Notes under the pieces: generated by a model | Database searches by the model: none | Seen by the model: the letters and a program-made list of their open reading frames with translations, nothing else | What the model was told of the DNA's origin: nothing | DNA from: Macrostomum lignano | Taxonomy: Eukaryota | Assembly (NCBI GenBank): GCA_002269645.1 | Contig: NIVC01001105.1 | Coordinates: forward strand, 24,334 to 88,333 | Length of the DNA stretch: 64,000 bases | Direction of reading: 5' to 3' | Position numbers and translations under genes: made by a program | Shown here: piece by piece, positions 19,473 through 59,056 of the stretch | Position numbering within the stretch: position 1 is the stretch's first letter | How the letters are laid out: each line of letters begins with the position of its first letter

Positions 19473-19475
19473 GGG

Positions 19476-20712: not shown

Positions 20713-20723
20713 AAATTGCGCAG

Positions 20724-21114: not shown

Positions 21115-21115
21115 C

Positions 21116-23218: not shown

Positions 23219-23280
23219 GAGGCTCAAAAGTTCCCTGACCTGACTGTTCAGGATTTCGTGTATCTCCTGTCACTCCGCAG

Positions 23281-24987: not shown

Positions 24988-25094
24988 GTGGGTTCTACCA
25001 GCGGAATGCGTCAGTCTGTAGAATTCCTTGAAACTTCTGGTTTAGAGCTAGCACTGAAAATGTGCTGACTGTCTTTAGTACCGTTAGATTACCG

Positions 25095-26172: not shown

Positions 26173-26210
26173 GTCGCCGGTTGTACTGCACTTTAATATT
26201 TCGTCGATAG

Positions 26211-26843: not shown

Positions 26844-27047
26844 TAAACTACTCTGATGAAGAACAAATTTACTCGCTAATTAAACTGAAAACTTTATTAC
26901 AATAATATCAGTATAGTGTGGAATTCTTTTAGTGCTTTACGGTTATGGTGATCGGTTTTTTACCATCAAAATTTGTGTTACTATTAGGAGCTATGTAACA
27001 TCCTTTGTTGAAATGGCCATGGGCTTGTTGTGTCTTTTTAATGACTT

Positions 27048-27593
27048 CAGTGGGAGCAGTGTGAAGGGAGCGGGGGCTTCGTGAAGGCAGTGGTGAGTGA
27101 GCAGGAGCAGTGTGAAGGGAGCGGGGGCGGTGTGAAAGGGGTGTGAAGAGAGCGGGAGCAGTGTGAAGAGAGCGGGGGCAGTGTGAAGGGAGCGGGGGCA
27201 GTGTGAAGGGAGCGGGGGCAGTGTGAAGGGAGCGGGAGCAGTGTGAAGAGAACGGGGGCAGTGTGAAGTGAGCAGAAGCAGTGTGAAGGGAGCGGGGGCG
27301 GTGTGAAAGGGGTGTGAAGTGAGCGGGAGCAGTGTGAAAGGAGCGGGAGCAGTGTGAAGAGAGCGGGGGCGGCGTGAAGGCAGTGTGAAGAGAGCGGGAG
27401 CAGTGTGAAGAGAGCGGAGGCAGTGTGAAGTGAGCGGGAGCAGTGTGAAGGGATCGGGGGCGGCGTGAAGGCAGTGGTGAGTGAGCGGGAGCAGTGTGAA
27501 GGGATCGGGGGCGGCGTGAAGGCAGTGGTGAGTGAGCGGGAGCAGTGTGAAGGGATCGGGGGCGGCGTGAAGGCAGTGGTGAGTGAGCGGGAG
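27048..27593. repeat. About 20-bp G-rich minisatellite GCAGTGTGAAGGGAGCGGGG
   Basis: Tandem array between aquaporin and globin. Confidence 0.93.
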
Positions 27594-27948
27594 CTTTCAA
27601 CTTCTATTTTATAAAAAGGCAAAGCACAGCCGCTGTGAAAAGCAGAAGTCATGCCAGGAACGAAAGCTGAACAGATCGTCGCCGCTCATGCATGACATCT
27701 TAGCTTAGCCTGCCTTAGCGTCCGCAGTTTCCGTTCGTGCCGCATCTCTTTCAGGATGTCTCTCTAAGTCTAATGTGCCTGCCTGAATGAAAAACAGGCT
27801 TCTCATGCCAGGGTTACCTGTAATTACAGCCGGGGCACCGTCTGCATTAGCGAGTTTCCCTTTCATCAAACCAGGAAGCCATCAAAGCTCCATCAGCAGT
27901 CAGTGCTGTCATGCTTGATGCCTTCCGGCCCAGCTCAGTCCGCTGTTC

Positions 27949-27956
27949 TATATAAA
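27949..27956 (+). promoter_or_regulatory. Putative TATA box of the globin gene
   Basis: TATATAAA about 85 nt upstream of the globin ATG. Confidence 0.5.
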
Positions 27957-28039
27957 CAAATTTTCAAATAATAGACTTTGTCTACTTTCTTTTCCGTTGC
28001 AATATCAAATATCTACGAGCATAGCTAGCATTTTCCGTA

Positions 28040-28143
28040 ATGGAGAAAATCAGTCTGACAGAGCAGGAGCAGCGAGTCATCAAGGCCGACTGGTTGGCAG
28101 CTACCAGGGACAAAACCGCTCTGGGTGTGGCCGTGTTTCTCAA
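28040..28143 (+). CDS. Globin exon 1 (missing from the ORF track)
   Basis: MEKISLTEQEQRVIKADWLAATRDKTALGVAVFL (A and B helices, Trp in helix A); phase-2 donor AA|GTGAGT at the B12.2 position. Confidence 0.88.
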
Positions 28144-28304
28144 GTGAGTAGCGAGTGAGATTGTACTCGCTAGCTGCTGGATGCTACATGAATTCTTCAG
28201 GAATTGTCTCAGTTTTGGTGTGTCAGTAGGTCTCAATCATCGTGTGACTATCAGGGCTGCCACTTTTCGAGCTAAGTTAAGGCACAAATTCAAGTGCCAG
28301 GGGC

Positions 28305-28945
28305 ACCAACTCAAGTGTGTCAGGGGAAACAAGTCAAGTGTGTCAGGGGAAACAAGTCAAGTGTGTCAGGGGAAACAAGTCAAGTGTGTCAGGAGCGACA
28401 AGTCAAGTGTGTCAGGGGAAACAAGTCAAGTGTGTCAGGGGAAACAAGTCAAGTGTGTCAGGGGAAACAAGTCAAGTGTGTCAGTGGAAACAAGTCAAGT
28501 GTGTCAGTGGAAACAAGTCAAGTGTGTCAGGGGAAACAAGTCAAGTGTGTCAGGGGAAACAAGTCAAGTGTGTCAGTGGAAACAAGTCAAGTGTGTCAGG
28601 GGAAACAAGTCAAGTGTGTCAGGGGAAACAAGTCAAGTGTGTCAGGGGAAACAAGTCAAGTGTGTCAGGGGAAACAAGTCAAGTGTGTCAGGGGAAACAA
28701 GTCAAGTGTGTCAGGGGAAACAAGTCAAGTGTGTCAGTGGAAACAAGTCAAGTGTGTCAGGGGAAACAAGTCAAGTGTGTCAGTGGAAACAAGTCAAGTG
28801 TGTCAGGGGAAACAAGTCAAGTGTGTCAGGGGAAACAAGTCAAGTGCGTCAGTGGAAACAAGTCAAGTGTGTCAGTGGAAACAAGTCAAGTGTGTCAGTG
28901 GAAACAACTCAAGTGTGTCAGTGGAAACAACTCAAGTGTGTCAGG
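28305..28945. repeat. 23-bp minisatellite CAAGTCAAGTGTGTCAGGGGAAA in globin intron 1
   Basis: About 28 units. Confidence 0.97.
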
Positions 28946-29006
28946 GGCGACAATTTAAGTGTCATCAAGCGCATCTGCTTTATCAGCGGCCGCCCGCATC
29001 CCTCAG

Positions 29007-29238
29007 GCTGTTCCAGCTGTACCCGGAGGTGCAGGTGAAGTTTTCGAACTTCCGCGACCGGCCCCTGTCTGAGCTGGCCGGGCTGCCCGCCCTGCGCGCC
29101 CACGGCCTCCGCGTGGTGAACTCGATGGACTCGGTGATCGCTTCGTTGGGCAGCTCCCATCCGGAGGCCTCAGCGGAGACCTTGCGGCTCATCGGCGAGT
29201 CGCACCTCAATCGAGGAGTTAACGTTGATCACTTCCTG
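29007..29238 (+). CDS. Globin exon 2
   Basis: LFQLYPEVQVKF (CD1 Phe), LRAHGLRVV (distal His E7), IGESHLNRGV (proximal His F8); phase-0 donor at G7.0. Confidence 0.9.
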
Positions 29239-29801
29239 GTGCGGCGGGGACTTCTGTGTGCACAATGTACCTGCAGTTTCCTAGAATTTTATTTGATTGA
29301 ACAACAGTTTTGCATTGTTTCTAAGAATTCTGCAAGGTTTCCAGGAATCTATTGACGCAGCAAAACGCGCAGATTGAATTTCGTATTAGGTTTCCTGGAA
29401 TTTCATATCTTTTTCTTAGAATTATAAGATTTGATTAAGTTTCTTGGAATCTGACACGGTTCCCGAGTTTTTAATTGCGTTTCTTGGAATTTCACATGGT
29501 TTTTTGGAAGCTAGTTTTTGCTAAAATTCTACTGTTTTTTCCTAGAATTAATTGTTTTTATTTACCTGGGTTTCTTAGAATTTCACGGAGTTTCCTGGAA
29601 GGCTTTTTAGTTTCCAGTGAATTTTATAGCTTTCTTAGAATTAGAATACTATTTGTCTTCAGGATATTAGAATTGGCTTCGGGTATCTTTTATTGGTTTC
29701 TAGGAATTCTAGTTTTCTTAAATGTCTGATATAAAATAAGTTAACAATATATACATATTTAAGTATCAGGAAACACCCCCAACGTCAATTCATTGATTCA
29801 G

Positions 29802-29945
29802 GCTCTCAACAACGTCCTTGACGCGGTGTTCCAGGACAGACTGGGCAGTCAGTACGCCGCTAACCGCCCCATCTGGCTAAAATTTCTGCAATCGATTGTG
29901 CCGCTGATCGTTGAGGGTCTCAATAGGGCCCAGTTTCTGGCCTAG
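29802..29945 (+). CDS. Globin exon 3 (spliced protein 159 aa)
   Basis: Acceptor GATTCAG at 29801; ALNNVLDAVFQDRLG...IWLKFLQSI (G and H helices); TAG at 29943-29945. Confidence 0.85.
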   Translation, partial: ALNNVLDAVFQDRLGSQYAANRPIWLKFLQSIVPLIVEGLNRAQFLA

Positions 29946-30076
29946 CGATTCTGTCGATTTTATTTACTGCTGTTGCTAAAAATAGAAACTTTGACGCCCC
30001 ACCTCACTCCCGTGAAATCTGATTGGCTGCAGTAAATATGCTTTTTTTAACGCTCAGATATTGTGTGCGGAGGACA

Positions 30077-30152
30077 TGAGGGTAGCCCCGTCAGAGGTTA
30101 ACGCATCTTAATATCAAGTTATAGGACCCGAGTTCGAATCCGAATGCGGTCA
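30077..30152 (+). mobile_element. Degenerate tRNA-derived SINE head
   Basis: A-box-like TAGCCCCGTCAGAGG and B-box GTTCGAATCC (30132-30141) at tRNA-like spacing; no intact cloverleaf. Confidence 0.55.
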
Positions 30153-30974
30153 TAGTAATTTGAAGCTTGATTTGCCATGGAAATTTACCTTGCTCTGCAA
30201 TTCACGCCCCGATGGCCGACCCCCCCCCCTAAGGCACAGAGAGTGTACATGCAAGGATCAGCGGGTCTGCTTAACTGCTTGCTGAATAACTGACTATACA
30301 TAGAAAATCATCATTTTTGCTATTGATACTACTGAAAACAGTAATACTATAGATTTTTTCTTAATTTCTAATTAATAAATCGAAACACGAGCTGCACATT
30401 TTTGCTGTATTAAAAATTTATTGCAAAGCTACTACTAACTTTACGACCTGATTACGAGCTATGATTATGTGTTGTGTTAGTGTACTTTCCTTGACCTTGA
30501 TTGCGTGCTGTGGCACATTTTCTCCAGCTAATGATTGCTCATCCCTAATTAGTCACTGCGCAGCTCCGATCGAGTCAAGAAATAAAAAAGCACAAGTTAA
30601 CGAACAAGATTTTGAGCACATGTGAGTGCAATGCTTTTTCACGAGCTTGCTTTGTATATAATTATTGTATGTGCAAACACAGTCTGTGTGTGTGTGCAAG
30701 CCACTTTCTCAATGAAAAAATAACAGGCAGACAAAGTTGGTAAAAGTTGGTCAACTTTGCTTTTAGCAAGCAAATGCCGAGGCTAAATATTCTGGCATAG
30801 AATTGATTAAAAACTCTGCTGAAAAAATCTTATGATAACAAAATTCACAAAGTGGAGGGATAGAAAGTCATGTGTGAGGGTTATTGTGACAGGGGAATGA
30901 ATTTAGTTTAAACCTTGTAGGCAACTAACGGAAGGTGAAGGCTTATAACAATATTTGCCATTTTAAAACATTGT

Positions 30975-31745
30975 CAGACGGTCAAGGCGAGGGAGAGAGG
31001 AACAGGGACTCAGCACGGTCAGATAAGAGAGGAACAGGGACTCAGCACGGTCAGGTGAGAAAGAGATGAACAGGGACTCAGCACGGTCAGGTGAGAAAGA
31101 GATGAACAGGGACTCAGCACAGTCAGGTGAGAGAGAGATGAACAGGGACTCAGCACAGTCAGGTGAGAGAGAGATGAACAGGGACTCAGCACAGTCAGGT
31201 GAGAGAGAGATGAACAGGGACTCAGCACAGTCAGGTGAGAGAGAGATGAACAGGGACTCAGCACAGTCAGGTGAGAGAGAGGGGAACAGGGACTCAGCAC
31301 GGTCAGGTGAGAGAGAGAGGAACAGGGACTCAGCACGGTCAGATAAGAGAGGAACGGGGACTCAGCACAGTCAGGTGAGAGAGAGAGGAACAGGACTCAG
31401 CACAGTCAGGTGAGAGAGAGAGAGGAACAGGACTCAGCACGGTCAGGTGAGAGAGAGAGAGGAACAGGGACTCAGCACGGTCAGGTGAGAGAGAAGAACA
31501 GGGACTCAGCACGGTCAGGTGAGAGAGAAGAACAGGGACTCAGCACGGTCAGGTGAGAGAGAAGAACAGGGACTCAGCACGGTCAGGTGAGAGAGAGAGG
31601 AACAGGACTCAGCACGGTCAGGTGAGAGAGAGAGGGGAACAGGGACTCAGCACGGTCAGGTGAGAGAGAAGAACAGGGACTCAGCACGGTCAGGTGAGAG
31701 AGAGAGGGGAACAGGGACTCAGCACGGTCAGGTGAGAGAGAGGAG
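30975..31745. repeat. About 36-bp minisatellite GAACAGGGACTCAGCACGGTCAGGTGAGAGAGA with variable (GA)n
   Basis: Tandem array directly downstream of the HS3ST stop codon. Confidence 0.95.
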
Positions 31746-31814
31746 GAGCAGGGGATCGGGGTCAGGACTCGCTTGATCATCGGAGGTGAATCCGGTTAAA
31801 TTCGCTGCCATTCA

Positions 31815-32774
31815 TCACAGGACAGGATTTGAACCCGCGCCCAGCTGCTCCGCCCGCCCCATCCAGGCAAAGCGCCGGCCCGTCAGCTCCGCCAGTCGGA
31901 GGTTGTGCGGTTCAAAGTAGGCGCGCAGCTTGGCCAGAGTCACCGGCGACACCGGCGGATGCTGGCGGCCCTTCTCGCTGCCCAGACAGCGCTGCCGCTG
32001 CCGCCGGCCCCGAACGCAGTAGAATCCCTTGGTAGAGTTGAACACGAACTGCTCCGGCCGATTGAGGAAGCTGGGCAGGCTGAGGAACTGCTCAACCAGG
32101 CGGAGCTCTTCGTGCGGCTCGCCGATCAACCGGTCGCCGTCGACAATGTGCAGCCGGTCGGCGGGAAAGTGGCGCAGCCAGCGGCGCAGATGCCGATGAT
32201 AGACGGAAGTTTGAATCATCCGGGAGCGCGGGTTCACCCGGCCGGAGCCGGACAGTACAAGCCGTTCCAATGGACGGGCCGGCCGTCCCGCTTTGGCCCG
32301 ACGGTGCAGGTGCTGGGCGTAGTCGCTGACAACCCGGGTCACGGGGTCGCGCAAAATCAGCAGCAGGCGCAGATTGGCGCCAAGCTGACGGCGCGCCAGC
32401 CGCGGCGCCGCCTCGGTAACAAAATAGGCGGGCGTCTTCTCGATCGTGAACTGGCCGGGCCGGCTGCGGGGCATCTGGCCGCGGTACCAGCTGAGGCCCC
32501 GCCGCAGCCTGTCCGTCTTGTCGAAGTAGTGAATCTCGCTTCTGGCCGCGGCCACGTTCGGATGAGCGTCTAGAAAGTCCAGGAGGGCGCGGGTGCCGCA
32601 CTTCCTGGCGCCGATAATGATGCAGTGTGGCAGCTGCTGCTGCGGCGGCGGTGGGGGCGACGGCGGCGGCGTCCGGTGACCGCGGAGGAGGACAGCGACG
32701 GTCAGGAGTGCCGCGGTGGCCAGCAGGGCTGCCAGGCCGATCCGCAGCAGCAGCCGCCCGCCATGGCCGGACAT
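31815..32774 (-). CDS. HS3ST: Heparan sulfate glucosamine 3-O-sulfotransferase (HS3ST1/5-like), single coding exon
   Basis: N-terminal TM helix; 5'-PSB IIIGARKCGTRALL; EIHYFD; IEKTPAYF; 3'-PB ILRDPVTRVVSDY; FNSTKGFYC; CLGSEKGRQHP. Confidence 0.92.
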   Translation of the reverse strand: MSGHGGRLLLRIGLAALLATAALLTVAVLLRGHRTPPPSPPPPPQQQLPHCIIIGARKCGTRALLDFLDAHPNVAAARSEIHYFDKTDRLRRGLSWYRGQMPRSRPGQFTIEKTPAYFVTEAAPRLARRQLGANLRLLLILRDPVTRVVSDYAQHLHRRAKAGRPARPLERLVLSGSGRVNPRSRMIQTSVYHRHLRRWLRHFPADRLHIVDGDRLIGEPHEELRLVEQFLSLPSFLNRPEQFVFNSTKGFYCVRGRRQRQRCLGSEKGRQHPPVSPVTLAKLRAYFEPHNLRLAELTGRRFAWMGRAEQLGAGSNPVL

Positions 32775-33044
32775 CCTCGTGTCGCACTGCTCGCTGATCG
32801 TCTGCTCGCAGCTGCTGTCCGCCTTTTTTCTGCTCCTGCAATTGTTGAGAACGCTGGCGAGCTTGCTGCACCGAGTTGCATAAACTCCTCCTCTCTTTGT
32901 CTGGCTCTCTCCATTCCTCTCATTCCATTGAGCTCACTCGCTTTCTTATTATGCGTGTCTGCGCGACCTCGCGCACTTCAGGCCGAGTGGGTTAGAGGGG
33001 TACCCGGTGCAAGGACCTCTAGATATAAATCTTTAGACTGGAGG

Positions 33045-34550
33045 CCTAAACTTCATCAATCCTTAACTTCACCAATCCTAAACTTCACTAATACTAAACT
33101 TCACTAATCCTAAACTTCACTAATCCTAAACTTCACTAATCCTAAACTTCACTAATCCTAAGCTTCACTAATCCTAAACTTCACTAATCCTAAACTTCAC
33201 TAATCCTAAACTTCACTAATCCTTAACTTCACTAATCTTAAACTTCATCAATCCTTAACTTCACTAATCATAAACTTCACCAATCCTAAACTTCACTAAT
33301 CTTAAACTTCACCAATCCTTAACTTCACTAATCATAAACTTCACCAATCCTAAACTTCACTAATCCTAAACTTCACCAATCCTAAACTTCACTAATCTTA
33401 AACTTCATCAATCCTTAACTTCACTAATCCTTAACTTCACTAATCTTAAACTTCACCAATCCTAAACTTTACTAATCCTAAACTTCACTAATCCTAAACT
33501 TCACTAATCCTAAACTTCACTAATCCTTAACTTCACTAATCTTAAACTTCACTAATCTTAAACTTCATCAATCCTTAACTTCACTAATCCTTAACTTTAC
33601 TAATCCTAAACTTTACTAATCCTTAACTTCACCAATCCTAAACTTCACTAATCCTTAACTTTACTAATCCTAAACTTTACTAATCCTTAACTTCACTAAT
33701 CCTAAACTTCACCAATCCTAAACTTCACTAATCCTAAACTTCAGTAATCCTTTACTTCACTAATCTTAAACTTCATCAATCCTTAACTTCACTAATCCTT
33801 AACTTCACTAATCTTAAACTTCACCAATCCTAAACTTTACTAATCCTAAACTTCACTAATCCTAAACTTCACTGATCCTAAACTTCACTAATCCTAAACT
33901 TCACCAATCCTTAACTTCACTAATCTTAAACTTCACCAATACTAAACTTCACTAATCCTAAACTTCACTAATCCTTAACTTCACCAATCCTAAACTTCAC
34001 TAATCCTTAACTTTACTAATCCTAAACTTTACTAATCCTTAACTTCACTAATCCTAAACTTCACCAATCCTAAACTTCACTAATCCTAAACTTCAGTAAT
34101 CCTTTACTTCACTAATCTTAAACTTCATCAATCCTTAACTTCACTAATCCTTAACTTCACTAATCTTAAACTTCACCAATCCTAAACTTTACTAATCCTA
34201 AACTTCACTAATCCTAAACTTCACTGATCCTAAACTTCACTAATCCTAAACTTCACCAATCCTTAACTTCACTAATCTTAAACTTCACCAATACTAAACT
34301 TCACTAATCCTAAACTTCACTAATACTTTACTTCACTAATCTTAAACTTCATCAATCCTTAACTTCACTAATCCTTAACTTCACTAATCTTAAACTTCAC
34401 CAATCCTAAACTTTACTAATCCTAAACTTCACTAATCCTAAACTTCACTAATCCTAAACTTCATCAATCCTTAACTTCACTAATCCTAGACTTCACTAAT
34501 CCTTAACTTCACTAATACCAAAATTCACTAATCCGAAACTTTATTAATCC
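33045..34550. repeat. 16-bp minisatellite TAAACTTCACTAATCC
   Basis: About 94 units with higher-order duplication. Confidence 0.97.
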
Positions 34551-39024: not shown

Positions 39025-39605
39025 ATCTTCTCTCCTCTCCCCTCTTTCCTCTCTCTCCTTGCCTATCTCCTCTCTCCTCTCTCCTCTCTCTCTACTCTCT
39101 CCTCTCTCCTCTCTCCTCTCTCTCCTCTCTCTCCTCTCTCCTCTCTCCTCTCTCTCCTCTCTCTCCTCTCTCTCCTCTCTCCTCTCTCCTCTCTCTCCTC
39201 TCTCCTCTCTCCTCTCTCCTCTCTCCTCCGGTCTCTCCTCTCTCCTCTCTCTCCTCTCTCCTCTCTCCTCCGCTCTCTCCTCTCTCCTCCCCTCTCCTCT
39301 CTCCTCTCTCCATTCTCCTCCCCTCTCTCCTCTCTCCTCTCTCCTCCGCTCTCTCCTCTCTCCTCCCCTCTCCTCTCTCCTCTCTCCATTCTCCTCCCCT
39401 CTCTCCTCTCTCCTCTCTCCTCCCCTCTCTCCTCTCTCCTCCCCTCTCTCCCCTCTCCTCTCTCTCCTCTCTCTCCTCTCCCTTCTCTCCTCTCTCCTCT
39501 CCTCTCTCCTCCCCTCTCTCCTCTCTCGTCCCACCTCTCTTTTTCTCCCCTCTCCTCTCCTCCCCTCCCCTCACTTCTCCCTTTCTCCTCTGTCTTTTCT
39601 CTTCT
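39025..39605. repeat. Polypyrimidine CTCTCCT satellite
   Basis: Directly visible; ends about 30 bp before the LINE target site. Confidence 0.93.
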
Positions 39606-39648
39606 CTCCCCTTAATCTCCCATCCTTGTCTATACTGCCCACCCACTC

Positions 39649-39891
39649 GCACGCGAAGGCGTATTCAGCATGCCAGTGAAGTATGAGACAGACTAGGCCC
39701 ATGGGCTAAGGTCTGCGATGCTTCACGCCTGCCCCTATCTTCAGCAGGTCAAGGCTGGTGGGAGGTCTGCACCCTCTATTTGCCTCTGGCAGCCGCAGAC
39801 CCCCCCCCACGCTGTCTCGCAAGTCGACCCAGGGTACTCGTCCCCGCGTGTGTTCAAGGCAGTCCCTAGGGCTGCTGGACAGACTGGGCTC
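39649..39891 (+). ncRNA. HDV-like self-cleaving ribozyme at the LINE 5' end
   Basis: P1 GCACGCG (39649-55) / CGCGTGT (39845-51) with first G.U wobble; P2 GACCCA / TGGG(C)TC; P3 GGG/CCC; L3 TACTCGT; P1.1 AC/GT; P4 hairpin 39854-39879; J4/2 CAGAC with candidate catalytic C39880. Confidence 0.8.
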
Positions 39892-40166
39892 CGGCGCTGG
39901 CGACCCTATCCAGTGGCTTCGGCCGAATTTGGGTATGCGGGTCTGGCTCGCCAACCTGCAGGCCGTGGTACTGCTCAACGTACTCTCTAATGCCTAAGGT
40001 GTTGACCGTGCCGATGGGCTGGAAGGCCGGGGAGTAGTCCGGTCGCAAGCGGTCCCCCTCCTGGTGTCGGGCCAGCCTTGAGGGTGCTATTGGCCTACTG
40101 CCCGGTCAGGTGGAGCGGCCGGGTGGGTACCGCGCCCCTTTGAGGGTAGCCCACCAACCTTTTATC

Positions 40167-41687
40167 ATGGCCTTCGAGCCGACTATGGATAAACAAGCTA
40201 TTTCTAGGGACGGGGACCCTTCTAAACCCCAACCTCAGTCCGAAGGACCGGCCGGCCCTGCTGGCAGATCCCAACCGACTGATTCAACTGTGGCAAAGGA
40301 AGGACCGGCTGGCTCTGCTGGCAGATCCGACCAGAGCTACCAAACTCAAAATACCCTAAGACCTGCCAGCTCCGCTGGTGGATCTAAGGGAACCGCGAGC
40401 TCTGAGCCTAAAGGACCGGCCAAATCTGGCAGATCCGATGAAGCTCAGCGGGCTCGGCTTGAGCGCAAACGCGCTAAACAACGCGCCAAAAGGCAGGCCA
40501 AGAAGGGAGCTGCGGGGGCCAAAGCGGCGGCGTCCACCATGGATGCTGAAGCGACTGGAGTCCCAAGGCAACCAGGCGGGCCGGCCGGTGGAAGCTCCAG
40601 TAGTTCAGCGGCGGCGCTCCCTGGAGCTGCTGCCGCGGCTGCTGAGGCCGAAACCACGGCGCAACAAATGGCCACTGCCAACAAGGAGGTTCCTTCGGGA
40701 GCTACCTTTGCGGCGAAGGCCAAGGCCAAAATCCCGGGAGTGATCATCCAAGGTCGCGACCAGGACTGGACCACTGATCAGCTTCAAAAAGTGTGGAGTG
40801 CTGTTGACTCCTATCTGATTGAGCTGACTGTCGAGGAGGGAATCTCCATCGGCGTTGAGCGGATGGTGCTGCGAAGCACATTCGTTCTTATTGCTCCTAG
40901 CAGCGAGGAGGACGCTCGGCGGCTGCTCCAGCGGCTACCGACGGTCTCCTTGGATGCTGACCTTGGCGGAGCTCTTTTTCTTCGCGAGGGCCAGCGTCCA
41001 AAGACGATACCCTATGTGGTTTTCGTCCCTGCTAAGAGCACCGCAGCTGGACCAGACGTTATTCGCCGGGTCCTACTGCGTCTGAACCCCGACCTCCCTG
41101 CTAGTGGACTGGTGTATCACCGTAAAGTCCGCAGGGGGGAGACGGGCAACTCAATTGTCCTCGGCCTTTCCAGCACTTGGGCGAGTCGGTACCCTAATGG
41201 ATCCTCTTTCCAGCTGGGTGCCCTCAAGCTCAAGTTGCGCCGAGGAAAGTCTGCCAAAGGGAAGGCTACTGCCAACCCCGGCATCTCCGGCAAGAGCGGG
41301 GCGCAGTCTAAGGCCCAAGGAAAGGCGCAAGCCGATCCCAAAGCCAAAGCTGCATCTCGCCCCTCTGCTAGCAGCAGTTCGGCGACCGCGGTAACGGCTC
41401 CGGCCAAGCCCCGGGAACCAAACCTGCCAGTCGGAGAAGGAGTTGAGGACGAGGCCGGGTCTTCGGAATCCGAGCTCTCCTCGGCCACCTTGGTGGGGTC
41501 TGAAGGTAAAGATGCAGGTGAGGAAGCTTCCTCCATCCTGTCATCGGAGCCTGAGGACTCTGCTGGGGGGCCGGTGGGGGTGAGGAGGCCATGGACGTCG
41601 ACCAACTCCCATCTCCCAGTCAAGCCCCAGCGGCCTGGGACGAGGACGATCTGTTGTCCAAGTCTCCTTGATGGCCCTGGGCTCTAG
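40167..41687 (+). CDS. LINE ORF1 (nucleic-acid-binding/chaperone protein); probable frameshift near 41575
   Basis: ATG at 40167; basic and low-complexity N-terminus, globular middle, acidic tail; position upstream of ORF2; no CCHC knuckle seen. Confidence 0.75.
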   Translation: MAFEPTMDKQAISRDGDPSKPQPQSEGPAGPAGRSQPTDSTVAKEGPAGSAGRSDQSYQTQNTLRPASSAGGSKGTASSEPKGPAKSGRSDEAQRARLERKRAKQRAKRQAKKGAAGAKAAASTMDAEATGVPRQPGGPAGGSSSSSAAALPGAAAAAAEAETTAQQMATANKEVPSGATFAAKAKAKIPGVIIQGRDQDWTTDQLQKVWSAVDSYLIELTVEEGISIGVERMVLRSTFVLIAPSSEEDARRLLQRLPTVSLDADLGGALFLREGQRPKTIPYVVFVPAKSTAAGPDVIRRVLLRLNPDLPASGLVYHRKVRRGETGNSIVLGLSSTWASRYPNGSSFQLGALKLKLRRGKSAKGKATANPGISGKSGAQSKAQGKAQADPKAKAASRPSASSSSATAVTAPAKPREPNLPVGEGVEDEAGSSESELSSATLVGSEGKDAGEEASSILSSEPEDSAGGPVGVRRPWTSTNSHLPVKPQRPGTRTICCPSLLDGPGL

Positions 41688-41710
41688 CCAGATATTGCAT
41701 TTAATACAGT

Positions 41711-44700
41711 ATGACTAAGCTCCACGCTGCCAAAGGAGCGACATTCTGTCTGCAAATAAATTTACAGCATTGCGTATCTGCGTCAGTAAATCTGATGAAG
41801 ATTGCTGAGCTGTACAGGCCAGGCCTCATCCTGATCCAGGAACCCTGGATGCGCAACGGTAAGTTGCCCAACATTCCCTCTGGCTACTCTGATTTTTATG
41901 TGTGTGGCCCGGGGAACAGCCGCCCTAGAGCGGCTATCCTCGCTGCTAGCCATCTCCAGGCTTGGCTGAGGACTGATCTCTCTGATGGAGACCTTTGCGT
42001 CATCCAATCTAATCATTTCTCTCCGCGTACGTGTCTTGTTGCCTCGGTTTATATCCCAGGCGACAGAGACCCTGCTCCGAGAGTTTACTGCGCCTTGCGC
42101 AGTACTGCGAGTCCCAGAACGCTGAGCTGTGCTTAGGGGGCGACCTCAACGCGCACCACAAGCACTGGGGCAGCAAAGATACCAACACTAGAGGAGAGGA
42201 GCTTCTGGCCCTCATCTCTAACACAAACCTCATGCTCTGCAACCGCGGCAGCACTCCTACCTTTAATAATGGCAGATGGACCGAGGTCCTCGACGCCACA
42301 CTCGTTACCCCAAGACTCTTTGACAGAGTCAAGGAGTGGAGAGTCTGGTCTGAGGAGCCCTCCCTGTCTGACCACTGCTTTATCGCCTTTAATATCGCGG
42401 ACACTAAAACCCAGTCTCCGATCACTTGGAGACGCAATATCCGCAACACTGATTGGGCGGCCTACAAGGCTGCCCTTGATCTGCACCTGCAGGAACTCAC
42501 GGACTTACGTCCGATTGAGACCTGCGAGGATGTGGATCATATGGCTGAGACGCTGACAGGTTGCATTATTGCAGCCTACGAAGCGGCTTGTCCTGCTCGC
42601 GCCTACAGAGGCAAGACCTCGGCGCCGTGGTGGAACCCGGAGCTGGGGAAACTCAGGCGGAAGGCCAAAAGCCTTCATCGCCGTGCCATGAAGACCGGAA
42701 ACCCGGAGGACATGGAGCTTTTCCGGCAAGCCTCCCGCAATTTCAAATCTGAAGTGCGCAAGGCCAAGGAATGTAAGTGGCGCCAATTCTGCAATGAATT
42801 GGATCAAGACAGACCTACTTCTAGGCTTGTCAAGGCCCTTACAATGGACAAAATGTCCAAATTAGCCATGATCAAAAAAGATGATGGCTCTCTTACTAAA
42901 GACCCTGAAGAAGTGCTTCAGCATATGCTTAGCACATTCTTCCCGAGGGTACCTACTGCTAGACCGGAGCCCAACCATTCGATGGATGGAGCCACCCTAG
43001 CGGCGGGCATTGTCACTGAAGACCTAATCGCTCGTGCGGTCAGAACCTTCAAACCCTTCAAATCTCCTGGACCTGATGGTATCTACCCTGTTCTCCTTCG
43101 TGAAGCAGCCAAGATACCCTCGTTCCTGAGACTCACCCGCAATCTTATGCGGGCCTCTATCCAGCTGGGATACGTTCCCAAAAGCTGGACTGAAGCTCGA
43201 GTAGTCTTTATTCCCAAACCTGGGAAGGGTGACTACCAAAGCGTCAAGGCCTTCCGGCCAATTAGCTTAACGTCAGCAATGCTTAAGCTCACTGAGAGGC
43301 TTATTCTCTGGCGGCTGCTCTCCTGCGAGCTGACAGCGATGCCCCTCAGCAATAATCAGCACGCCTTCCGTACCGGGAGGTCGACTGACAGCGCCCTGCA
43401 TGCGATTGTCGAAAAGATTGAACGGGCGGTACTGGGTGACGGTTACGCCCTGGCTCTCTTTCTTGACATTGTTGGCGCCTTCGACAACGTTATCTTTGAA
43501 GCGTTTCAGAGGGCCCTTCAAAATCGCAAAGCTCATGCTACCCTCATACGGTGGATCATGTACATGATCTCCAACCGTACGGTCACTGCCCAACTTCTTG
43601 GGCAAACTGCCTCCACCAGAGTCTGTAAGGGTGGACCCCAAGGCGGAGTCCTCACCCCGACGCTCTGGAACCTGGTCATGGACGCTCTTCTGAGTGACTC
43701 CCGACCTGACCCCGTCTTCAAAGTCGGGTATGCTGATGACGTCACGGCCATTGTGGCAGGACCGTCTCCCAGCACGCTCAGGGATCTGATGCAGAGCTTT
43801 ATCCGCAAAGCAGAATCCTGGGCCAATGACAATGGTTTGGAACTCTCTGAGCCCAAAACCGTTGCCATTATGTTTACCAGCAGACTACGCTGGAACATAC
43901 GTCCTCTGCAGCTCTACGGCAGAGATATTGCCTTCGCGCACCAGACCAGATGTCTCGGGGTCACACTTGACCACCGGCTCAACTGGTCCTTCCACGTGAA
44001 AGCAAAAGCTAAGCGTGCCTCAGCCATCCTGGCCCAGCTCCGACGAGCACTTGGCACTTCTTGGGGTCTATCCCCAAAGCGGCTTTGGTGGATCTATACT
44101 TCCGTAGTTAGACCTGCCATTACGTACGCCTCTGTTGTCTGGGTTAGCGCTACCCAGGTCAAAAGCCATGCAGACCTGCTCAACACGATCCAAGGCAGAG
44201 CGTGTAGGCTCATCTGCAACGCCACCAGGTCCACGCCCTTTGCTGGCATGGGGGCCTTTCTTAATCTTCCGCCTCTTGACCTCTTCATCAGGGGTGAGGC
44301 GGCTAGAACGACGCGGCGTCTAATTGATGCCGGCGTCAAATTCATTTACATGAGAGCACCTGCTAAGCGGAACCTTGTCCCGCATAGCGATCTGTGCCTC
44401 AACTTTCTCAACGAGTGTCAGGCCAATCGCGTCTTCACCGATGGCATTGCCTCAACGCTCAACCTGAGACAGCGCTACTCCGTAGCTATCGACTCGCGCG
44501 ATAACATCAATGACCATTGGAACCCTGGTGAGCTTCATTGCTACACCGACGGTTCTAAGCAGTCAGCCAACACCGGCTTTGGTGTTGGAATCTTTCTGAA
44601 CGGGAGGGTCATCGCTACCCACGCTCAATACACTGGGGTCAACTCCAGTGTTTTCCAAAATGAAGTTCTGGCCATCAGCTCCTGCACTGCAGAGCTTCTC

Positions 44701-45447
44701 GCCACTGGCGTTACTGGTAAGAACATCATTTTCCATTCGGACAGCCAAGCTGCCTTGCACGCCATCAGTGGCTGCAGCACCAACTCTGCTACAGTCCTTG
44801 ACTGTATCAAACTCCTCAATGTGTTGGGTTCCGCCAACAAAATTACCCTTAAGTGGGTTCCGGGGCATGTGGGGATCCGAGGAAATGAGTTGGCTGACAC
44901 CCTTGCAAAAGTTGGTGCCTCCGGCTCCTCTCTCGGCCCCGAACCTCTTGTCCCGATTCCTGGCTGTGTCATCGACTCGCGCATCAAAGCGTGGATCAGG
45001 ACCAGCACCGCTCGACTTGGGCGAACGCACTACTGCAGGCAATCCAGAGGCGCTGTCCCTCAGCCCTCTCACCAGCTCCGGAAGCTCCTCTTGCGCCTCT
45101 CGCGCAGAGACATCCGGGCTGCCACCATGACCCTCTCTGGTCACGGCTGCTTCTCCAGGCACCAGTACCTGCAGGGCAACGCCACCAACGCCACCTGTAG
45201 TTTCTGCAACTCAGGTGACGAAACCGCTGAGCATTTCGTCAGCATCTGTCCCGCCTTCACGCGGGCCAGACTCACTTACCTCGGGCCACACACATCTATT
45301 ACTGAAGCGTGCAAACCCGAAAACTTTAATCAGCTCATGCGCTACCTTCGGGCCACCCGCAGGGCTGAACTCTCCTTTCCAGAGAGCACCATAGCTGCTG
45401 GCGACACTGGGGGACCTCCCTGGGCGGCGCCAACCCTCCGTCCATAG
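41711..45447 (+). CDS. LINE ORF2 (APE endonuclease, RT, RNase H, CCHC) with a -1 frameshift near 42078
   Basis: QINLQH / IQEPW / GDLNAHH / SDH (APE); GPDG, FRPISL, FLDIVGAFD, PQGGVLTP, YADD (RT); YTDGSK, NEVLAI, SDSQAAL, WVPGHVGIRGNELAD (RNase H); CSFC..ETAEHFVSIC. Confidence 0.93.
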
Positions 45448-46394
45448 CGACGCGTCGGCCGTTCAGGGACTAGCGGAATGGGCGCCCGCGCCTTCCCGCT
45501 GTGTCCCCTCCGGGACAGCCCTGCAGCTAAGTCAAGTCAAGCCCACCCACTCTTATATTTATCCCCTTCATATCTATCCCTCTTCCGCTATGCATTTCGT
45601 GTGGCGATGCTCTAGGTGGTGGGTGCACTTCTTTGAGTTTTGTCACTACTGATAGGGCCAATTAGTTTTTGCCTGTCTAATGTGCATTTTAATTGCTTAT
45701 CATTTCTTGCAGGGTTTAGAAAATCATTAATAATTAATTAGTCAAAACGAAAAGACGGACCAGAAGATCTGCTGTTGTATTTTTCTACAATTTTCGCGAC
45801 AGTTTTTTTGCACTTAACTCTTCCACGCCTTCATCTATCTTATCTCGCAGCCTCCCCTGCCAGGATCTCCCATGGTCACTTCCCAGTTCGCTGACATTTT
45901 CGGGAAATGCACATAAAATATTTTTTTACGAGTGCAAAACTATAGGCGTAGTTGGTCCGGCTGCCAAACTCTCATCCCAATTCTTACCAATCCCGATATG
46001 CTCCCGTAGCAGCAGAATTTGAATCGATCTCCATCCGTGGCTTCATTAGGCAGGGACGGGGGAGCAGTGAGGGACAGAGCATGGCATTAATCAAGGGCAT
46101 CTCGAGATCTGCACTGGCTGCTCAGCTGAGCATTCTGTTCCTCCTCTTCCTCCGGTTATTTTCGGCTTGAAAAAATCCGAGATTCTCCTGGCAGATTTCT
46201 GGGGGAATTTTGAGATTATATTCTATTCAAACGCTTTGAGACGGACGGATCAAGTTTTTTTCTGGGTCGAAGATAAAAAATGAAAATGATACGGGTAGAC
46301 ACTCGACCCATAGCGCTCGGACCATAAAACTGCTTATAGGCCACTGATGAAGAATAAGCACAGCATTGCTCAGCTGCTGCGAAAGTAGTTTCAG

Positions 46395-47254
<860 letters not shown>

Positions 47255-48434: not shown

Positions 48435-48748
48435 TCACTTCTACTCAAATTTCGGCGCCACTTCTACTCAAGTTTCGGTGCCAATCCTACTCAAATTTCG
48501 GCGCCAATCCTACTCAAGTTTCGGCGCCAATCCTACTCAAGTTTCGGCGCCAATCCTACTTAAGTTTCGGCGCCTCACTCATACTCAGTAATTAGCGCCT
48601 CACGCATACTCAGTAATTGGCGCCTCACTCATACCCAGTAATTGGCGCCTCACTCATACCCAGTAATTGGCGCCTCACTCATACCCAGTAATTGGCGCCT
48701 CACTCATACCCAATAATTGGCGCCTCACTCATACCCAGTAATTGGCAC
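48435..48748. repeat. Adjacent 23-bp and 25-bp GGCGCC-core minisatellites
   Basis: TTTCGGCGCCAATCCTACTCAAG followed by AATTGGCGCCTCACTCATACCCAGT. Confidence 0.9.
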
Positions 48749-49399
48749 CATTCAAGTGTTGATATCAGACTAACTACGGAAGTCTGTATGCTTGCAGTTG
48801 TGACTCATCGATGAGTTTGGGACATTCGAAAACTGAGCTCAGAGAGAGCTGATCAACTGTAGCTGAGTAGGCGAATCGAGCAATGCATTTGGGCGAAATC
48901 TCCTCTTTGTAAGTAATCCTCACTTTTGGCAACTTGACTTTCCCGCGTCTCTTTGCAACATTCTTGTTTTTGCTTTTCTTCTCTTCTTGCCGAAAGCGAC
49001 TTTTTGCTCGCGAGACCAGGAGCCAACAGGAGATTGGATTTCGCTGTTGCTGGGGTGTAGGTTACGGGCTTGATGGCAAGGGCCCGCGGGTCTCCATTAG
49101 TGTGAAAGCATTTGATGGTGCCTCGAGTTGCTCTAAGGGACGGTCCTACTTTTAGACCGCAACAGCGGACAGGGCGGCTATCCATGCACCATGTAGGACT
49201 TTTGATTGAAGAGATCTCACACTTCCGAGGTTGGGGCTTGTTTCTCTGTCCGGTAATCGAGTTAATACCCCATCCCTACGTGTATGTTTGTATCCTTATT
49301 TAATCTCATCCATTGCTGAGCGGTAATCCTTCCTGGCTGTCTCTGGTGCAGAAAATACAGGCACCAGCTTTGGACTTGATAAAGTCTCATGGCAGTCAG

Positions 49400-50520
49400 G
49401 ACTCAGCACTCAGTTCACACACTGTCTATGACACTCGGCACTCAGTTAACACAATGTCTATGGCACTCGGCACTCAGTTAACACACTGTCTATGGCACTC
49501 CGCACTCAGTTAACACACTGTCTATGACACTCGGCACTCAGTTAACACAATGTCTATGGCACTCGGCACTCAGTTAACACACTGTCTATGGCACTCCGCA
49601 CTCAGTTAACACACTGTCTATGACACTCGGCACTCAGTTAACACACTGTCTATGGCACTCGGCACTCAGTTAACACACTGTCTATGACACTCGGCACTCA
49701 GTTCACACACTATCTATGACACTCGGCACTCAGTTAACACACTGTCTATGACACTCGGCACTCAGTTAACACACTGTCTATGACACTCGGCACTCAGTTA
49801 ACACAATGTCTATGGCACTCGGCACTCAGTTAACACACTGTCTATGGCACTCCGCACTCAGTTAACACACTGTCTATGACACTCGGCACTCAGTTAACAC
49901 AATGTCTATGGCACTCGGCACTCAGTTAACACACTGTCTATGGCACTCCGCACTCAGTTAACACACTGTCTATGACACTCGGCACTCAGTTAACACACTG
50001 TCTATGGCACTCGGCACTCAGTTAACACACTGTCTATGACACTCGGCACTCAGTTCACACACTATCTATGACACTCGGCACTCAGTTAACACACTGTCTA
50101 TGACACTCGGCACTCAGTTAACACACTGTCTATGACACTCGGCACTCAGTTAACACACTGTCTATGACACTCGGCACTCAGTTAACACACTGTCTATGAC
50201 ACTCGGCACTCAGTTCACACACTATCTATGACACTCGGCACTCAGTTAACACACTGTCTATGACACTCGGCACTCAGCACTCAGCTCACAAACCATCTAT
50301 GGCACTTCAGCACTCAGCACTCAGCTCACACACTGTCTATGGCACTCGGCACTCAGCACTCAGCTCACACACTGTCTATGGCACCCGGCACTCAGCACTC
50401 AGCTCACACACTGTCTATGGCACCCGGCACTCAGCACTCAGCTCACACACTGTCTATGGCACCCGGCACTCAGCACTCAGCTCACCAACTGTGTATGGCA
50501 CTCGGCACTCAGCACTCAGC
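49400..50520. repeat. 32-bp minisatellite ACACTCGGCACTCAGTTAACACACTGTCTATG grading into a 39-bp variant
   Basis: Tandem array with a 352-bp higher-order duplication. Confidence 0.96.
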
Positions 50521-51182
50521 GAGATTCACAGGTTCATCATTCGCAGTTCCACACGTGTCTGTGGGCAGCAAATCGATTTATTAATAATCATAATAATTCA
50601 TCGTATATGCAATATGAAGCCTGAAAGCCCTGATAAGCCACCGTGGGGGGTGGTTTGAGTGTTGCATCACCTTATCGATATCTAAAGTGTTAAGAAAACT
50701 ATTATTATTTCCAAAGCCGTCCCTCCAACAGTAGTGTCTTTATCTCCTTTGCTTTAGTATATTTTTCATTGCAGATTCTGCAGAGCAGATGAAGACCAAT
50801 ATACAGAGGCCAAGAGCAAGTCAGATAACATATCAGCTTTGAAATTTGAGTGCCTCCGGTTCGGTAATATACCATGAATTAATTGTTTTGCTTTTGCCGG
50901 CTCGAACTCCCATCAGTTCGGCCCAGTTGGTAGTAAACACAGTTCGGTCATTGTTATCATTATTAATCGAGAAGTCACCTTATCAGGTGTCGATTGTTCA
51001 GAGCTCTGGGGGGTTCTCTGGGGGGTTCTTCAGATTCTCCCATGCGAAGCTTTTCTGGGAAATTGTTTTTTCTAGGCTTAGCAAATGAATCTTCTTTGAC
51101 TTGCAAAAGCGTTTAGAACAAGCGAAGTAATGATCCTTTGGATTAGGTTGGATGGATGCAGATAGTGAATATAGCTCGTACA

Positions 51183-51662
51183 AGGAGAGGCGGATAGAGG
51201 GAGAGGGTGGATAGAGGGAGAGGGCGGATAGAGGGAGAGGGCGGATAGAGGGAGAGGGCGGATAGAGGGAGAGGGCGGATAGAGGGAGAGGGCGGATAGA
51301 GGGAGAGGGCGGATAGAGGGAGAGGGCGGATAGAGGGAGAGGGCGGATAGAGGGAGAGGGCGGATAGAGGGAGAGGGCGGATAGAGGGAGAGGGCGGATA
51401 GAGGGAGAGGGCGGATAGAGGGAGAGGGTGGATAGAGGGAGAGGGCGGATAGAGGGAGAGGGCGGATAGAGGGAGAGGGCGGATAGAGGGAGAGGGCGGA
51501 TAGAGGGAGAGGGCGGATAGAGGGAGAGGGCGGATAGAGGGAGAGGGTGGATAGAGGGAGAGGGCGGATAGAGGGAGAGGGTGGATAGAGGGAGAGGGCG
51601 GATAGAGGGAGAGGGCGGATAGAGGGAGAGGGCGGATAGAGGGAGAGGGCGGATAGAGGGAT
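51183..51662. repeat. 17-bp G-rich minisatellite GAGGGAGAGGGCGGATA
   Basis: About 28 units. Confidence 0.96.

Positions 51663-58317: not shown

Positions 58318-59056
<739 letters not shown>

What the first reader, a model, noticed from the sequence alone, without database searches (positions are those of the whole stretch)
39649..39891. HDV-like ribozyme defines the exact 5' end of a full-length LINE
Seen: the first base after the 12-bp TSD (G39649) opens a 7-bp P1 with the hallmark G.U wobble. P2, P3, L3 (U..UCGU), P4 and a CNRA-type J4/2 (CAGAC) all fall in the HDV nested-pseudoknot order. P1.1 is an A-U/C-G pair rather than the usual C-G/C-G, which looks like compensatory change. The ~170-nt J1/2 insert folds into two multi-stem domains (GTGAAGTAT/ATGCTTCAC, CAGAC/GTCTG, GGTCTGC/GCAGACC). 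Known: HDV-like ribozymes process the 5' ends of R2, RTE and some Loa/R1-group elements and can aid translation. Inference: this element releases its 5' end from host read-through transcripts by self-cleavage; I know of no description of such a ribozyme in this lineage.
Basis: partly seen in the sequence, partly recalled or inferred. Interest (0 to 1): 0.88.

Follow-up and report, generated by a model that had tools for sequence, protein, structure and literature searches.

The report
Self-cleaving ribozyme heading a flatworm LINE
The first 243 bases of a young jumping gene (a LINE) in the flatworm Macrostomum lignano fold like the hepatitis-delta-type self-cutting RNA, so the element probably trims its own 5' end; this trick is known from other LINEs but is new for flatworms and for this LINE group.

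Summary
A 5,892-bp LINE (39649-45540) lies between perfect 12-bp target-site duplications. Its first base, G39649, opens a 7-bp P1 with a G.U wobble. P2, P3, L3 (UACUCGU), P1.1, P4 and a C39880-AGA J4/2 follow in the HDV nested double-pseudoknot order around a 170-nt structured J1/2.

My descriptor hit only this site in 128 kb, against about 0.05 chance hits per 64 kb.

The main support is comparative. The only near relative I could reach (L001, ORF2 57% identical) starts at the same position. It keeps P1, P2, P1.1 and P4 through compensatory changes.

Five more distant LINE families from metagenomes (ORF2 31-37% identical) carry HDV-like motifs at their 5' ends; four are clear and one is probable. 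In one of them, Rfam's HDV-family models are the three best hits (all below gathering score) and two begin at the predicted cleavage base.

Caveats:
- Cleavage is untested.
- The window's P2 is short and bulged, and its core fold is thermodynamically weak.
- Rfam and a covariance model built from relatives both miss it.
- ORF2 has one frameshift.
- No host gene lies upstream, so read-through is not shown here.

Verdict: a real new member of a known kind, of moderate interest.

The parts
39637..39648 (+). Left target-site duplication, GCCCACCCACTC
   Evidence: Exact 12-mer found only here and at 45541-52.
39649..39891 (+). Whole HDV-like ribozyme candidate; predicted cleavage between C39648 and G39649
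   Evidence: Only descriptor hit in 128 kb. All pairs verified. Helices covary with L001.
39649..39655 (+). P1 5' strand, GCACGCG (G39649 = +1)
   Evidence: Pairs with 39845-51 with a G.U at the first pair. L001 has GCCUGC/GCAGGC at the same place.
39656..39825 (+). J1/2 insert, 170 nt, a closed multi-stem domain
   Evidence: MFE -68.2 kcal/mol, z = -2.3, ends brought together by a closing stem. The first hairpin is conserved with L001; 7 of 34 predicted pairs changed on both sides.
39826..39831 (+). P2 5' strand, GACCCA
   Evidence: Pairs with 39885-91, C39889 bulged. L001 has CUCAGA/UCUGAG; 4 of 6 pairs changed on both sides.
39832..39844 (+). P3 (GGG/CCC) enclosing L3 UACUCGU
   Evidence: U39835 and G39840 occupy the positions of HDV U20 and G25. 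L001 has GGG-UCUCCGU-CCC.
39845..39853 (+). P1 3' strand CGCGUGU, then GU that forms P1.1 with A39836 and C39837
   Evidence: P1.1 covaries across seven elements.
39858..39876 (+). P4 hairpin (GGCAG / CUGCU, loop UCCCUAGGG)
   Evidence: L001 has an unrelated 11-bp hairpin at the same place.
39877..39884 (+). J4/2, GGACAGAC, with the candidate catalytic C39880 (C-A-G-A = CNRA)
   Evidence: Sequence. Relatives have G-C-U-R-R here.
39885..39891 (+). P2 3' strand, UGGG(C)UC
39892..40166 (+). Rest of the 5' UTR
   Evidence: Blocks conserved with L001, for example CCGGGGAGTAnTCCGG and GGTGGGTAC.
40167..41687 (+). ORF1, 506 aa, no Pfam match
   Evidence: It is 87-99% identical, over 36-46% of its length, to parts of M. 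lignano gene models. ORF1 of relatives L003 and L017 carries DUF4780.
41711..45447 (+). ORF2: AP endonuclease, reverse transcriptase, RNase H and C-terminal CCHC; one frameshift at about 42068-42085
   Evidence: Pfam, translations, tblastn against L001 ORF2.
45448..45540 (+). 3' UTR ending in AAGTCAAGTCAA (45529-45540)
   Evidence: TAGCGGAATGGGCG and CCCTGCAGCTAAGTCAA are conserved in L001.
45541..45552 (+). Right target-site duplication

Best explanation
Window 39649-39891 encodes an HDV-like (nested double-pseudoknot) self-cleaving ribozyme. It forms the 5' end of a young APE/RT/RNase H LINE of Macrostomum lignano.

Proposed mechanism. Any transcript that runs into or starts upstream of the element folds into P1-P4 and P1.1. 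C39880 in J4/2, with Mg2+, would catalyse attack of the 2'-OH of C39648 on the 39648/39649 phosphodiester. This would leave an element RNA that starts with a 5'-OH G39649. That RNA would be translated and reverse-transcribed, so full-length copies begin at G+1 immediately after the TSD. By analogy with drz-Agam-2-1, the 170-nt J1/2 folds as a closed domain that holds P1 and P2 together.

Shown: the motif, its exact coincidence with the TSD boundary, covariation with L001, and the same device in related LINE families. Inferred: catalysis, the identity of the catalytic C, the source of the precursor transcript, and any role in translation.
For: - Exact boundary: 12/12 TSD, and G39649 is both the first element base and P1 position 1.
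- Uniqueness: one descriptor hit in 128 kb, against 0.05 expected per 64 kb.
- L001 (ORF2 57% identical, ORF1 33%) begins at the homologous G. It keeps P3 and L3 almost unchanged while P1, P2, P1.1 and P4 differ in sequence and still pair. Pairs changed on both sides: P1 2 of 6, P2 4 of 6, P1.1 2 of 2.
- Relatives with ORF2 31-37% identical have complete HDV-like motifs about 2-2.7 kb upstream of ORF2, all starting with G. These are L003 (= L055), L017, L012 and L005; L022 is probable. In L003 and L017 the motif begins where an A+T-rich flank ends.
- Rfam HDV-F-prausnitzii (E = 0.005), drz-agam-1 and HDV_ribozyme are the three best hits on L012. The first two start at 848, the predicted cleavage base; HDV_ribozyme starts at 846.
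- A covariance model made from L003 alone finds L017 (E = 2e-7) and L005 (E = 9e-6). Their alignment is 98% paired, and 12 of 21 pairs changed on both sides; 0 of 500 shuffles reached this.
- Large structured J1/2 domains and long P2 helices are known to be compatible with, or to activate, HDV-like ribozymes (PMC4908430; PMC3774820).
Against: - There are no cleavage data.
- Rfam gives nothing for the window, even at E <= 10. The 170-nt insert may explain this.
- A covariance model built from L003, L017 and L005 does not find the window core. It aligns L001 in the expected register at only 12.4 bits.
- The window's P2 is 4+2 bp with a bulge, and the nested core is no more stable than shuffles (z = -0.9).
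- P1.1 contains an A-U pair.
- L001's J4/2 is GCUGC, which is not CNRA.
- Only one close relative could be obtained, and no other M. lignano copies.
- L082 (ORF2 44% identical, degenerate) shows no such motif.
- My descriptors were fitted after seeing the candidate.
Confidence: 0.75

Rival explanations
1. The HDV-like fold is real and conserved, but in this copy or subfamily it cleaves poorly or not at all. It would serve mainly another 5' UTR role, such as translation initiation of ORF1 or binding of the element's proteins. The 5' end would then be set by an internal promoter that starts at G39649.
For: - The nested core is weak here (z = -0.9), whereas relatives range from -2.8 to -6.2.
- P2 is short and bulged, and P1.1 has an A-U pair.
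- L001 lacks CNRA.
- The covariance model from relatives misses the window.
- HDV-like ribozymes of R2 and L1Tc are reported to promote translation, and L1Tc's first 77 nt are both promoter and ribozyme (PMC6765202; PMC3383444).
- ORF2 is frameshifted, so this copy is not under selection now.
Against: - L3 U39835 and G39840, the J4/2 C and the G.U at +1 are all in place.
- P1 involves the very first base in all seven elements, which a translation or binding role alone would not require.
- The TSDs are perfect and ORF1 is 87-99% identical, over 36-46% of its length, to other copies, so the copy is young and little mutated.
Confidence: 0.15
2. The match is a chance resemblance. The 5' UTR is simply G+C-rich and structured, and the element starts at G39649 because transcription starts there.
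For: - No curated model hits the window.
- Loosened descriptors give about as many hits on the wrong strand as on the right one.
- The 170-nt gap gives much freedom in finding a P1 partner.
Against: - The strict descriptor hits once, at this base, at a chance rate of about 1e-6 per position.
- L001 keeps five pairings through double changes at homologous positions. My rough estimate for that happening by chance is below 1e-6.
- Relatives have textbook versions, one of which Rfam HDV models recognise.
Confidence: 0.05

Closest known systems
R2 retrotransposon HDV-like ribozymes (Drosophila, silkmoths and others; PMC3774820)
   Same: The ribozyme is the first part of the element RNA. Cleavage defines or nearly defines the 5' end. 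P1 covaries between species while P3, L3 and P1.1 stay conserved. J1/2 can be very long (216-498 nt in silkmoths). J4/2 is poorly conserved apart from the C.
   Different: R2 has a restriction-like endonuclease and a single ORF, inserts only in 28S rDNA, and is co-transcribed by Pol I. The element here has two ORFs with APE, RT and RNase H, makes 12-bp TSDs, and sits in non-rDNA satellite-rich DNA. P1 lies wholly inside the element.
drz-Agam-2 family (mosquito RTE elements; PMC4908430)
   Same: A large structured J1/2 domain (P1.2) pinches P1 and P2 together. The 12-bp P2 is matched by relatives L003 and L017 (12-13 bp).
   Different: The LINE clade differs: RTE has no RNase H and a single ORF. 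The window's own P2 is only 6 bp, and its J1/2 is a multi-branch domain rather than one helix.
L1TcRz / Pr77 of Trypanosoma cruzi L1Tc (ingi clade; PMC3185411, PMC3383444, PMC4035085)
   Same: An HDV-like ribozyme occupies the first bases of an APE/RT/RNase H LINE that is dispersed in the genome. It is shared across a whole clade of related elements.
   Different: L1TcRz is compact (77 nt) and doubles as an internal promoter. The host is a protist with polycistronic transcription. I detected no sequence similarity, and a relationship between the clades was not established.
Baggins (LOA), SART and R6 (R1 clade) and R4 ribozyme-terminated LINEs (Ruminski et al. 2011, J Biol Chem; recalled from memory, paper not held; Baggins and RTE also cited in PMC6765202)
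   Same: HDV-like ribozymes process the 5' ends of arthropod and nematode LINEs, including RNase H-bearing relatives of the I group.
   Different: Those hosts are arthropods, nematodes and chordates. None is a flatworm, and none has the DUF4780-type ORF1 seen in this element's relatives L003 and L017.
Genomic/antigenomic HDV and CPEB3 ribozymes
   Same: Same topology; 7-bp P1 with G.U at +1; 3-bp P3; L3 U..UCG.; 2-bp P1.1; C-N-R-A in J4/2.
   Different: Those are compact, with a J1/2 of a few nucleotides and a P1.1 of two G-C pairs. Rfam models for them do not match the window.

Membership tests
HDV-like self-cleaving ribozymes | Nested double pseudoknot in the order P1-5', (J1/2), P2-5', P3-5', L3, P3-3', P1-3', P1.1, P4, J4/2, P2-3' | tested here: met
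   Descriptor hit at 39649. Every pair verified.
HDV-like self-cleaving ribozymes | Cleavage site at the 5' base of a 6-7-bp P1, usually G+1 in a G.U wobble | tested here: met
   G39649.U39851 closes a 7-bp P1. All seven related elements start with G.
HDV-like self-cleaving ribozymes | 3-bp P3 closing an L3 of 7-8 nt, with the U (U20) and G (G25) that form the reverse wobble | tested here: met
   GGG-UACUCGU-CCC, with U39835 and G39840. The importance of the L3 G is described in PMC3774820.
HDV-like self-cleaving ribozymes | P1.1: one or two pairs between L3 and the bases just 3' of P1 | tested here: met
   A39836-U39853 and C39837-G39852. The composition is unusual, but it covaries: CU:AG in L001 and L003, CC:GG in four others.
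HDV-like self-cleaving ribozymes | Catalytic C in J4/2 (C-N-R-A) a few bases before P2-3' | tested here: met
   C39880-A-G-A, then C, then P2. The close relative L001 has C-U-G-C instead, so the motif is not strict in this group.
HDV-like self-cleaving ribozymes | Helices supported by compensatory changes in relatives | tested here: met
   Window versus L001, by hand and script. Relatives' cores: 12 of 21 pairs changed on both sides. Only one close relative was available.
HDV-like self-cleaving ribozymes | Match to curated covariance models (Rfam RF00094, RF00622, RF01787, RF01788, RF02682) | tested here: not met
   No hit in the window at gathering score or at E <= 10. The models cannot span a 170-nt J1/2. 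Relative L012, with a 3-nt J1/2, is hit by three of them below gathering score. I treat this as a limit of the models rather than as evidence against the fold.
HDV-like self-cleaving ribozymes | Mg2+-dependent self-scission giving 2',3'-cyclic phosphate and 5'-OH, lost on mutating the catalytic C | not testable with these tools
   This needs a bench assay.
Non-LTR retrotransposon (LINE), APE type with RNase H | TSDs, ORF1, an ORF2 with APE + RT (+ RNase H, CCHC), and a 3' simple-repeat tail | tested here: met
   ORF2 has one frameshift.
Named LINE clade (Nimb, Ingi, I, LOA, R1 ...) | RT-domain phylogenetic placement against reference elements | tested here: inconclusive
   No reference set was available. 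The RT is 27% identical to one RTclass1-typed Nimbus RT from PMC11203168. The APE is nearest to TRAS1 among solved structures. The clade is left open.

The most novel reading that the evidence does not exclude
The window's element may belong to a large, so far unrecognised, ribozyme-terminated LINE lineage. Its features would be two ORFs (ORF1 with DUF4780 in the two relatives scanned), an ORF2 with APE, RT, RNase H and CCHC, and short simple-repeat 3' tails. It would be spread across aquatic animals, with the HDV-like ribozyme ancestral. The big J1/2 domain would be a gained or lost functional module, such as an ORF1-translation or protein-binding platform or an internal promoter as in Pr77, and not mere spacer. 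J1/2 is conserved within subgroups, yet it is 3 nt in L012 against 100-187 nt in L017, L003 and L005.
Probability: 0.3. Interest if true: 0.6.

Novelty: new member of a known kind. Interest (0 to 1): 0.5.

Why it matters
HDV-like ribozymes at LINE 5' ends are established for R2, R4, R6, SART, Baggins, RTE and L1Tc, so the principle is not new. Three things are new.

- This would be the first such ribozyme candidate in a flatworm. Macrostomum lignano is a transgenic laboratory model in which cleavage, 5'-OH ends and effects on translation could be tested in vivo.
- At least seven related LINE families, taken from environmental animal DNA, share the device. That points to an additional ribozyme-terminated LINE lineage that current Rfam models mostly miss because of long J1/2 inserts.
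- Closely related elements differ in J1/2 from 3 nt to nearly 190 nt. This is a natural series for testing how peripheral domains tune HDV-like catalysis.

For annotation, such motifs give base-exact 5' ends of LINE families.

Tried and rejected
**Model and descriptor searches**
- Rfam on the whole window at gathering score, and on 39300-40300 at E <= 10, found no ribozyme family.
- Rfam on L001, L003, L005, L017 and L022 found no HDV hit. I attribute this to their long J1/2 inserts.
- MAFFT could not align the cores of the different families, so I could not build one model from all of them. I built R1 from L003 and R2 from L003, L017 and L005.
- R2 did not find the window core even with filters off. 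It found L001 only weakly and L022 only locally.
- Looser home-made descriptors gave as many hits on minus strands as on plus strands, so I dropped them as uninformative. A hit inside ORF1 of L012 at 1074 and one in L052/L053 were rejected as chance.

**Attempts to reach other M. lignano copies**
- There is no second copy in the window.
- The ORF1 search returned only three chimeric gene models without DNA.
- An exact ORF1 look-up found nothing on record.
- A profile of the ORF1 core domain found nothing.
- ORF1-based scans of metagenome and viral contigs found nothing.
- A conserved J1/2 26-mer pattern had no match in genome or viral contigs.
- P0001 (57% identical) has no retrievable DNA.
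- L082 (44%) is degenerate and shows no convincing motif.

**Other**
- TSD searches for L003, L012 and L017 found no repeat of 7 nt or more.
- For clade assignment I tried the literature, solved structures, Pfam and one labelled Nimbus RT (27% identity). The result was inconclusive.
- I considered C39875 (in GCUGGA, which resembles the relatives' GCUGA/GCUAG) as an alternative catalytic C. I rejected it because it lies 9 nt from P2-3', against 3-4 nt in all relatives.

Full report
**What is there**

The window comes from Macrostomum lignano. ORF1 of the element is 87-99% identical, over 36-46% of its length, to parts of three M. lignano gene models, and several of the named ORF2 hits are from the same species.

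An exact 12-bp direct repeat, GCCCACCCACTC, occurs only at 39637-48 and 45541-52. It brackets a 5,892-bp element, 39649-45540, made up as follows:
- a 518-nt 5' UTR;
- ORF1, 40167-41687, with no Pfam domain;
- a 23-nt spacer;
- ORF2, 41711-45447, with AP endonuclease, reverse transcriptase, RNase H and a C-terminal CCHC motif;
- a 93-nt 3' UTR ending in AAGTCAAGTCAA.

ORF2 has one frameshift at about 42068-42085. The copy is full length and young but not intact as assembled. There is no second copy in the window.

**Check of the observation**

- P1: 39649-55 with 39845-51, 7 bp, G39649.U39851.
- P2: 39826-31 with 39885-91, 6 bp, C39889 bulged.
- P3: GGG 39832-34 with CCC 39842-44.
- L3: UACUCGU.
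- P1.1: A39836-U39853 and C39837-G39852.
- P4: 39858-62 with 39872-76.
- J4/2: GGA-C39880-AGA-C.

A closing stem brings its ends, and hence P1 and P2, together (-68.2 kcal/mol, z = -2.3).

A descriptor requiring all core features hit once in both strands of the window, at 39649. The chance rate was 0.05 per 64 kb of element-like sequence. The descriptor was written after seeing the candidate, so I give more weight to the comparative evidence.

**Comparative evidence, close relative**

Only one near relative could be fetched. L001 is a 6.5-kb Logan contig whose ORF2 is 57% and ORF1 33% identical. It begins at the base homologous to G39649.

P3 and L3 are nearly the same: GGG-UCUCCGU-CCC. The helices differ in sequence and still pair:
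- P1: GCCUGC/GCAGGC.
- P2: CUCAGA/UCUGAG.
- P1.1: CU:AG.
- P4: an unrelated 11-bp hairpin.

Against the window, 2 of 6 P1 pairs, 4 of 6 P2 pairs and both P1.1 pairs are changed on both sides. The first J1/2 hairpin is also conserved with compensatory changes. L001's J4/2 is GCUGC, so CNRA is not strict.

**Comparative evidence, distant relatives**

A scan of metagenome contigs with an ORF2 alignment returned 80 loci with 28-40% identity. Complete HDV-like motifs lie about 2-2.7 kb upstream of ORF2, on the coding strand, in these loci:

| Locus | P1 start | P1 | J1/2 | P2 | Other features |
|---|---|---|---|---|---|
| L003 (= L055) | 2666 | 7 bp | 129 nt | 12 bp | L3 UCUACGU, J4/2 GCUGA |
| L017 | 575 | 6 bp | 100 nt | 13 bp, one bulge | J4/2 GCUAA |
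| L012 | 848 | 7 bp, G.U at +1 | 3 nt | 9 bp, one bulge | L3 UCCACGUU, J4/2 GCUAAAU |
| L005 | 157 | 7 bp | 187 nt | 12 positions, one mismatch | J4/2 GCUAG |
| L022 (probable) | 27 | 6 bp | 226 nt if the distal P2 is right | unclear | L3 UCCUCGU |

All of them start with G. In L003 and L017 the motif begins where an A+T-rich flank ends.

On L012, Rfam's HDV-F-prausnitzii (E = 0.005), drz-agam-1 and HDV_ribozyme are the three best hits, all below gathering score. The first two begin at 848; HDV_ribozyme begins at 846.

A covariance model built from L003 alone finds L017 (E = 2e-7) and L005 (E = 9e-6). Their alignment is 98% paired, with 12 of 21 pairs changed on both sides, which none of 500 shuffles reached.

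**Weak points**

- Rfam finds nothing in the window or in the relatives with long J1/2 inserts.
- The three-sequence model does not find the window core. It aligns L001 in my manual register at only 12.4 bits. The Macrostomum-type cores are therefore a divergent subgroup.
- The window's nested P2/P3/P4 part is no more stable than shuffles (z = -0.9). Relatives range from -2.8 to -6.2.
- L082 (44% identical, degenerate) has no convincing motif.
- No other M. lignano copies could be reached, so within-family conservation is untested.

**Mechanism**

The most likely reading is the standard one for ribozyme-terminated LINEs. A precursor transcript folds, C39880 with Mg2+ promotes cleavage 5' of G39649, and the 5'-OH RNA serves as mRNA and template. 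Full-length insertions therefore begin at G+1 next to the TSD. Catalysis and the source of the precursor are inferred.

This copy sits between a CT-rich microsatellite (39029-39591) and a (CTA)n array (46395-47254), in a window full of roughly 20-bp minisatellites with no gene nearby. Read-through from a host gene is therefore not evident here. An internal promoter combined with a ribozyme, as in L1Tc Pr77 (PMC3383444), cannot be excluded.

**Comparison with what is known**

HDV-like ribozymes at LINE 5' ends are described for:
- R2 (PMC3774820);
- L1Tc/ingi (PMC3185411, PMC4035085);
- Baggins and RTE (PMC6765202);
- R4, R6 and SART (Ruminski et al. 2011, recalled from memory).

Long J1/2 loops and activating J1/2 domains are also known (PMC3774820, PMC4908430). 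I found no report for Macrostomum, and my flatworm search, which was poorly targeted, surfaced none. A 2021 paper says that no S. mansoni non-LTR element had been tied to a ribozyme before its twister variants.

The clade of this LINE stays open. It has an RNase H-bearing I-group architecture, relatives whose ORF1 carries DUF4780, and only 27% RT identity to one typed Nimbus element.

**Verdict**

This is a new member of a known kind. Confidence in the main explanation is 0.75. Interest is 0.5.

Noticed in passing
window 16357-34550 and 48441-62255: The window is packed with long minisatellite arrays. Their units are about 15-42 bp and unrelated to each other, for example 16357-17412, 18489-19694, 21941-23220, 25091-26173, 33045-34550, 54809-55710, 56381-57889 and 60814-62255. 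Most 'ORFs' of 220 aa or more listed in the window overlap these arrays.
   Followed up: no
window 39029-39591 and 46395-47254: The LINE is inserted just 3' of a CT-rich microsatellite. It lies about 850 bp upstream of a 286-copy (CTA)n array. No host gene was seen in the roughly 2 kb upstream that I examined.
   Followed up: partly
window 39821-39825, 45529-45540, 28294-28962: The 3' tail unit AAGTC also occurs immediately 5' of P2 in the ribozyme (CGCAAGUCGACC). Relatives L003 and L017 have GGAAGUCC at the same place. A 23-bp minisatellite unit at 28294-28962 contains AAGTCAAGT. The meaning is unknown and it may be coincidence.
   Followed up: no
L017 6082-6101; L012 6229-6252; window 45529-45540: The related LINEs end in short tandem pentanucleotide repeats that differ between families: (AGAAG)4, (GGTAA)4 and (AAGTC)2. 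L082 ends in (GAT)n(GTGA)n.
   Followed up: partly
L012 848-975 versus L017 575-763: These two LINEs are about 72% identical in the distal 5' UTR. Their ribozymes share core motifs (ACC...GGU, GGCUAA), but J1/2 is 3 nt in one and 100 nt in the other. The J1/2 domain appears to be gained or lost as a module.
   Followed up: partly
L003 2673-2696, L017 581-604, L005 164-187: The start of J1/2 is conserved across three distant families (..GCC.TG..GATGCG.AAG..). This suggests the J1/2 domain has a sequence-specific role.
   Followed up: no
window 45460-45540 and L001 5880-5965: The 3' UTR blocks TAGCGGAATGGGCG and CCCTGCAGCTAAGTCAA are conserved between elements whose ORF2 is only 57% identical. 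They are candidates for the RT recognition site.
   Followed up: no
window 42068-42085: A single frameshift splits the AP-endonuclease domain of ORF2. It could be a real mutation or an assembly error.
   Followed up: partly
L001 1: The Logan contig ERR14788467_472973 starts exactly at the predicted cleavage base. It runs past the element's 3' end into a gene on the opposite strand. I could not tell whether this reflects an RNA end or a repeat-boundary break in assembly.
   Followed up: no
window 40000-40094: There is a weak Rfam match to the Mycobacterium sRNA ncrMT1302 (22 bits, E = 0.13) in the 5' UTR downstream of the ribozyme. I take it as chance in G+C-rich structured sequence.
   Followed up: no
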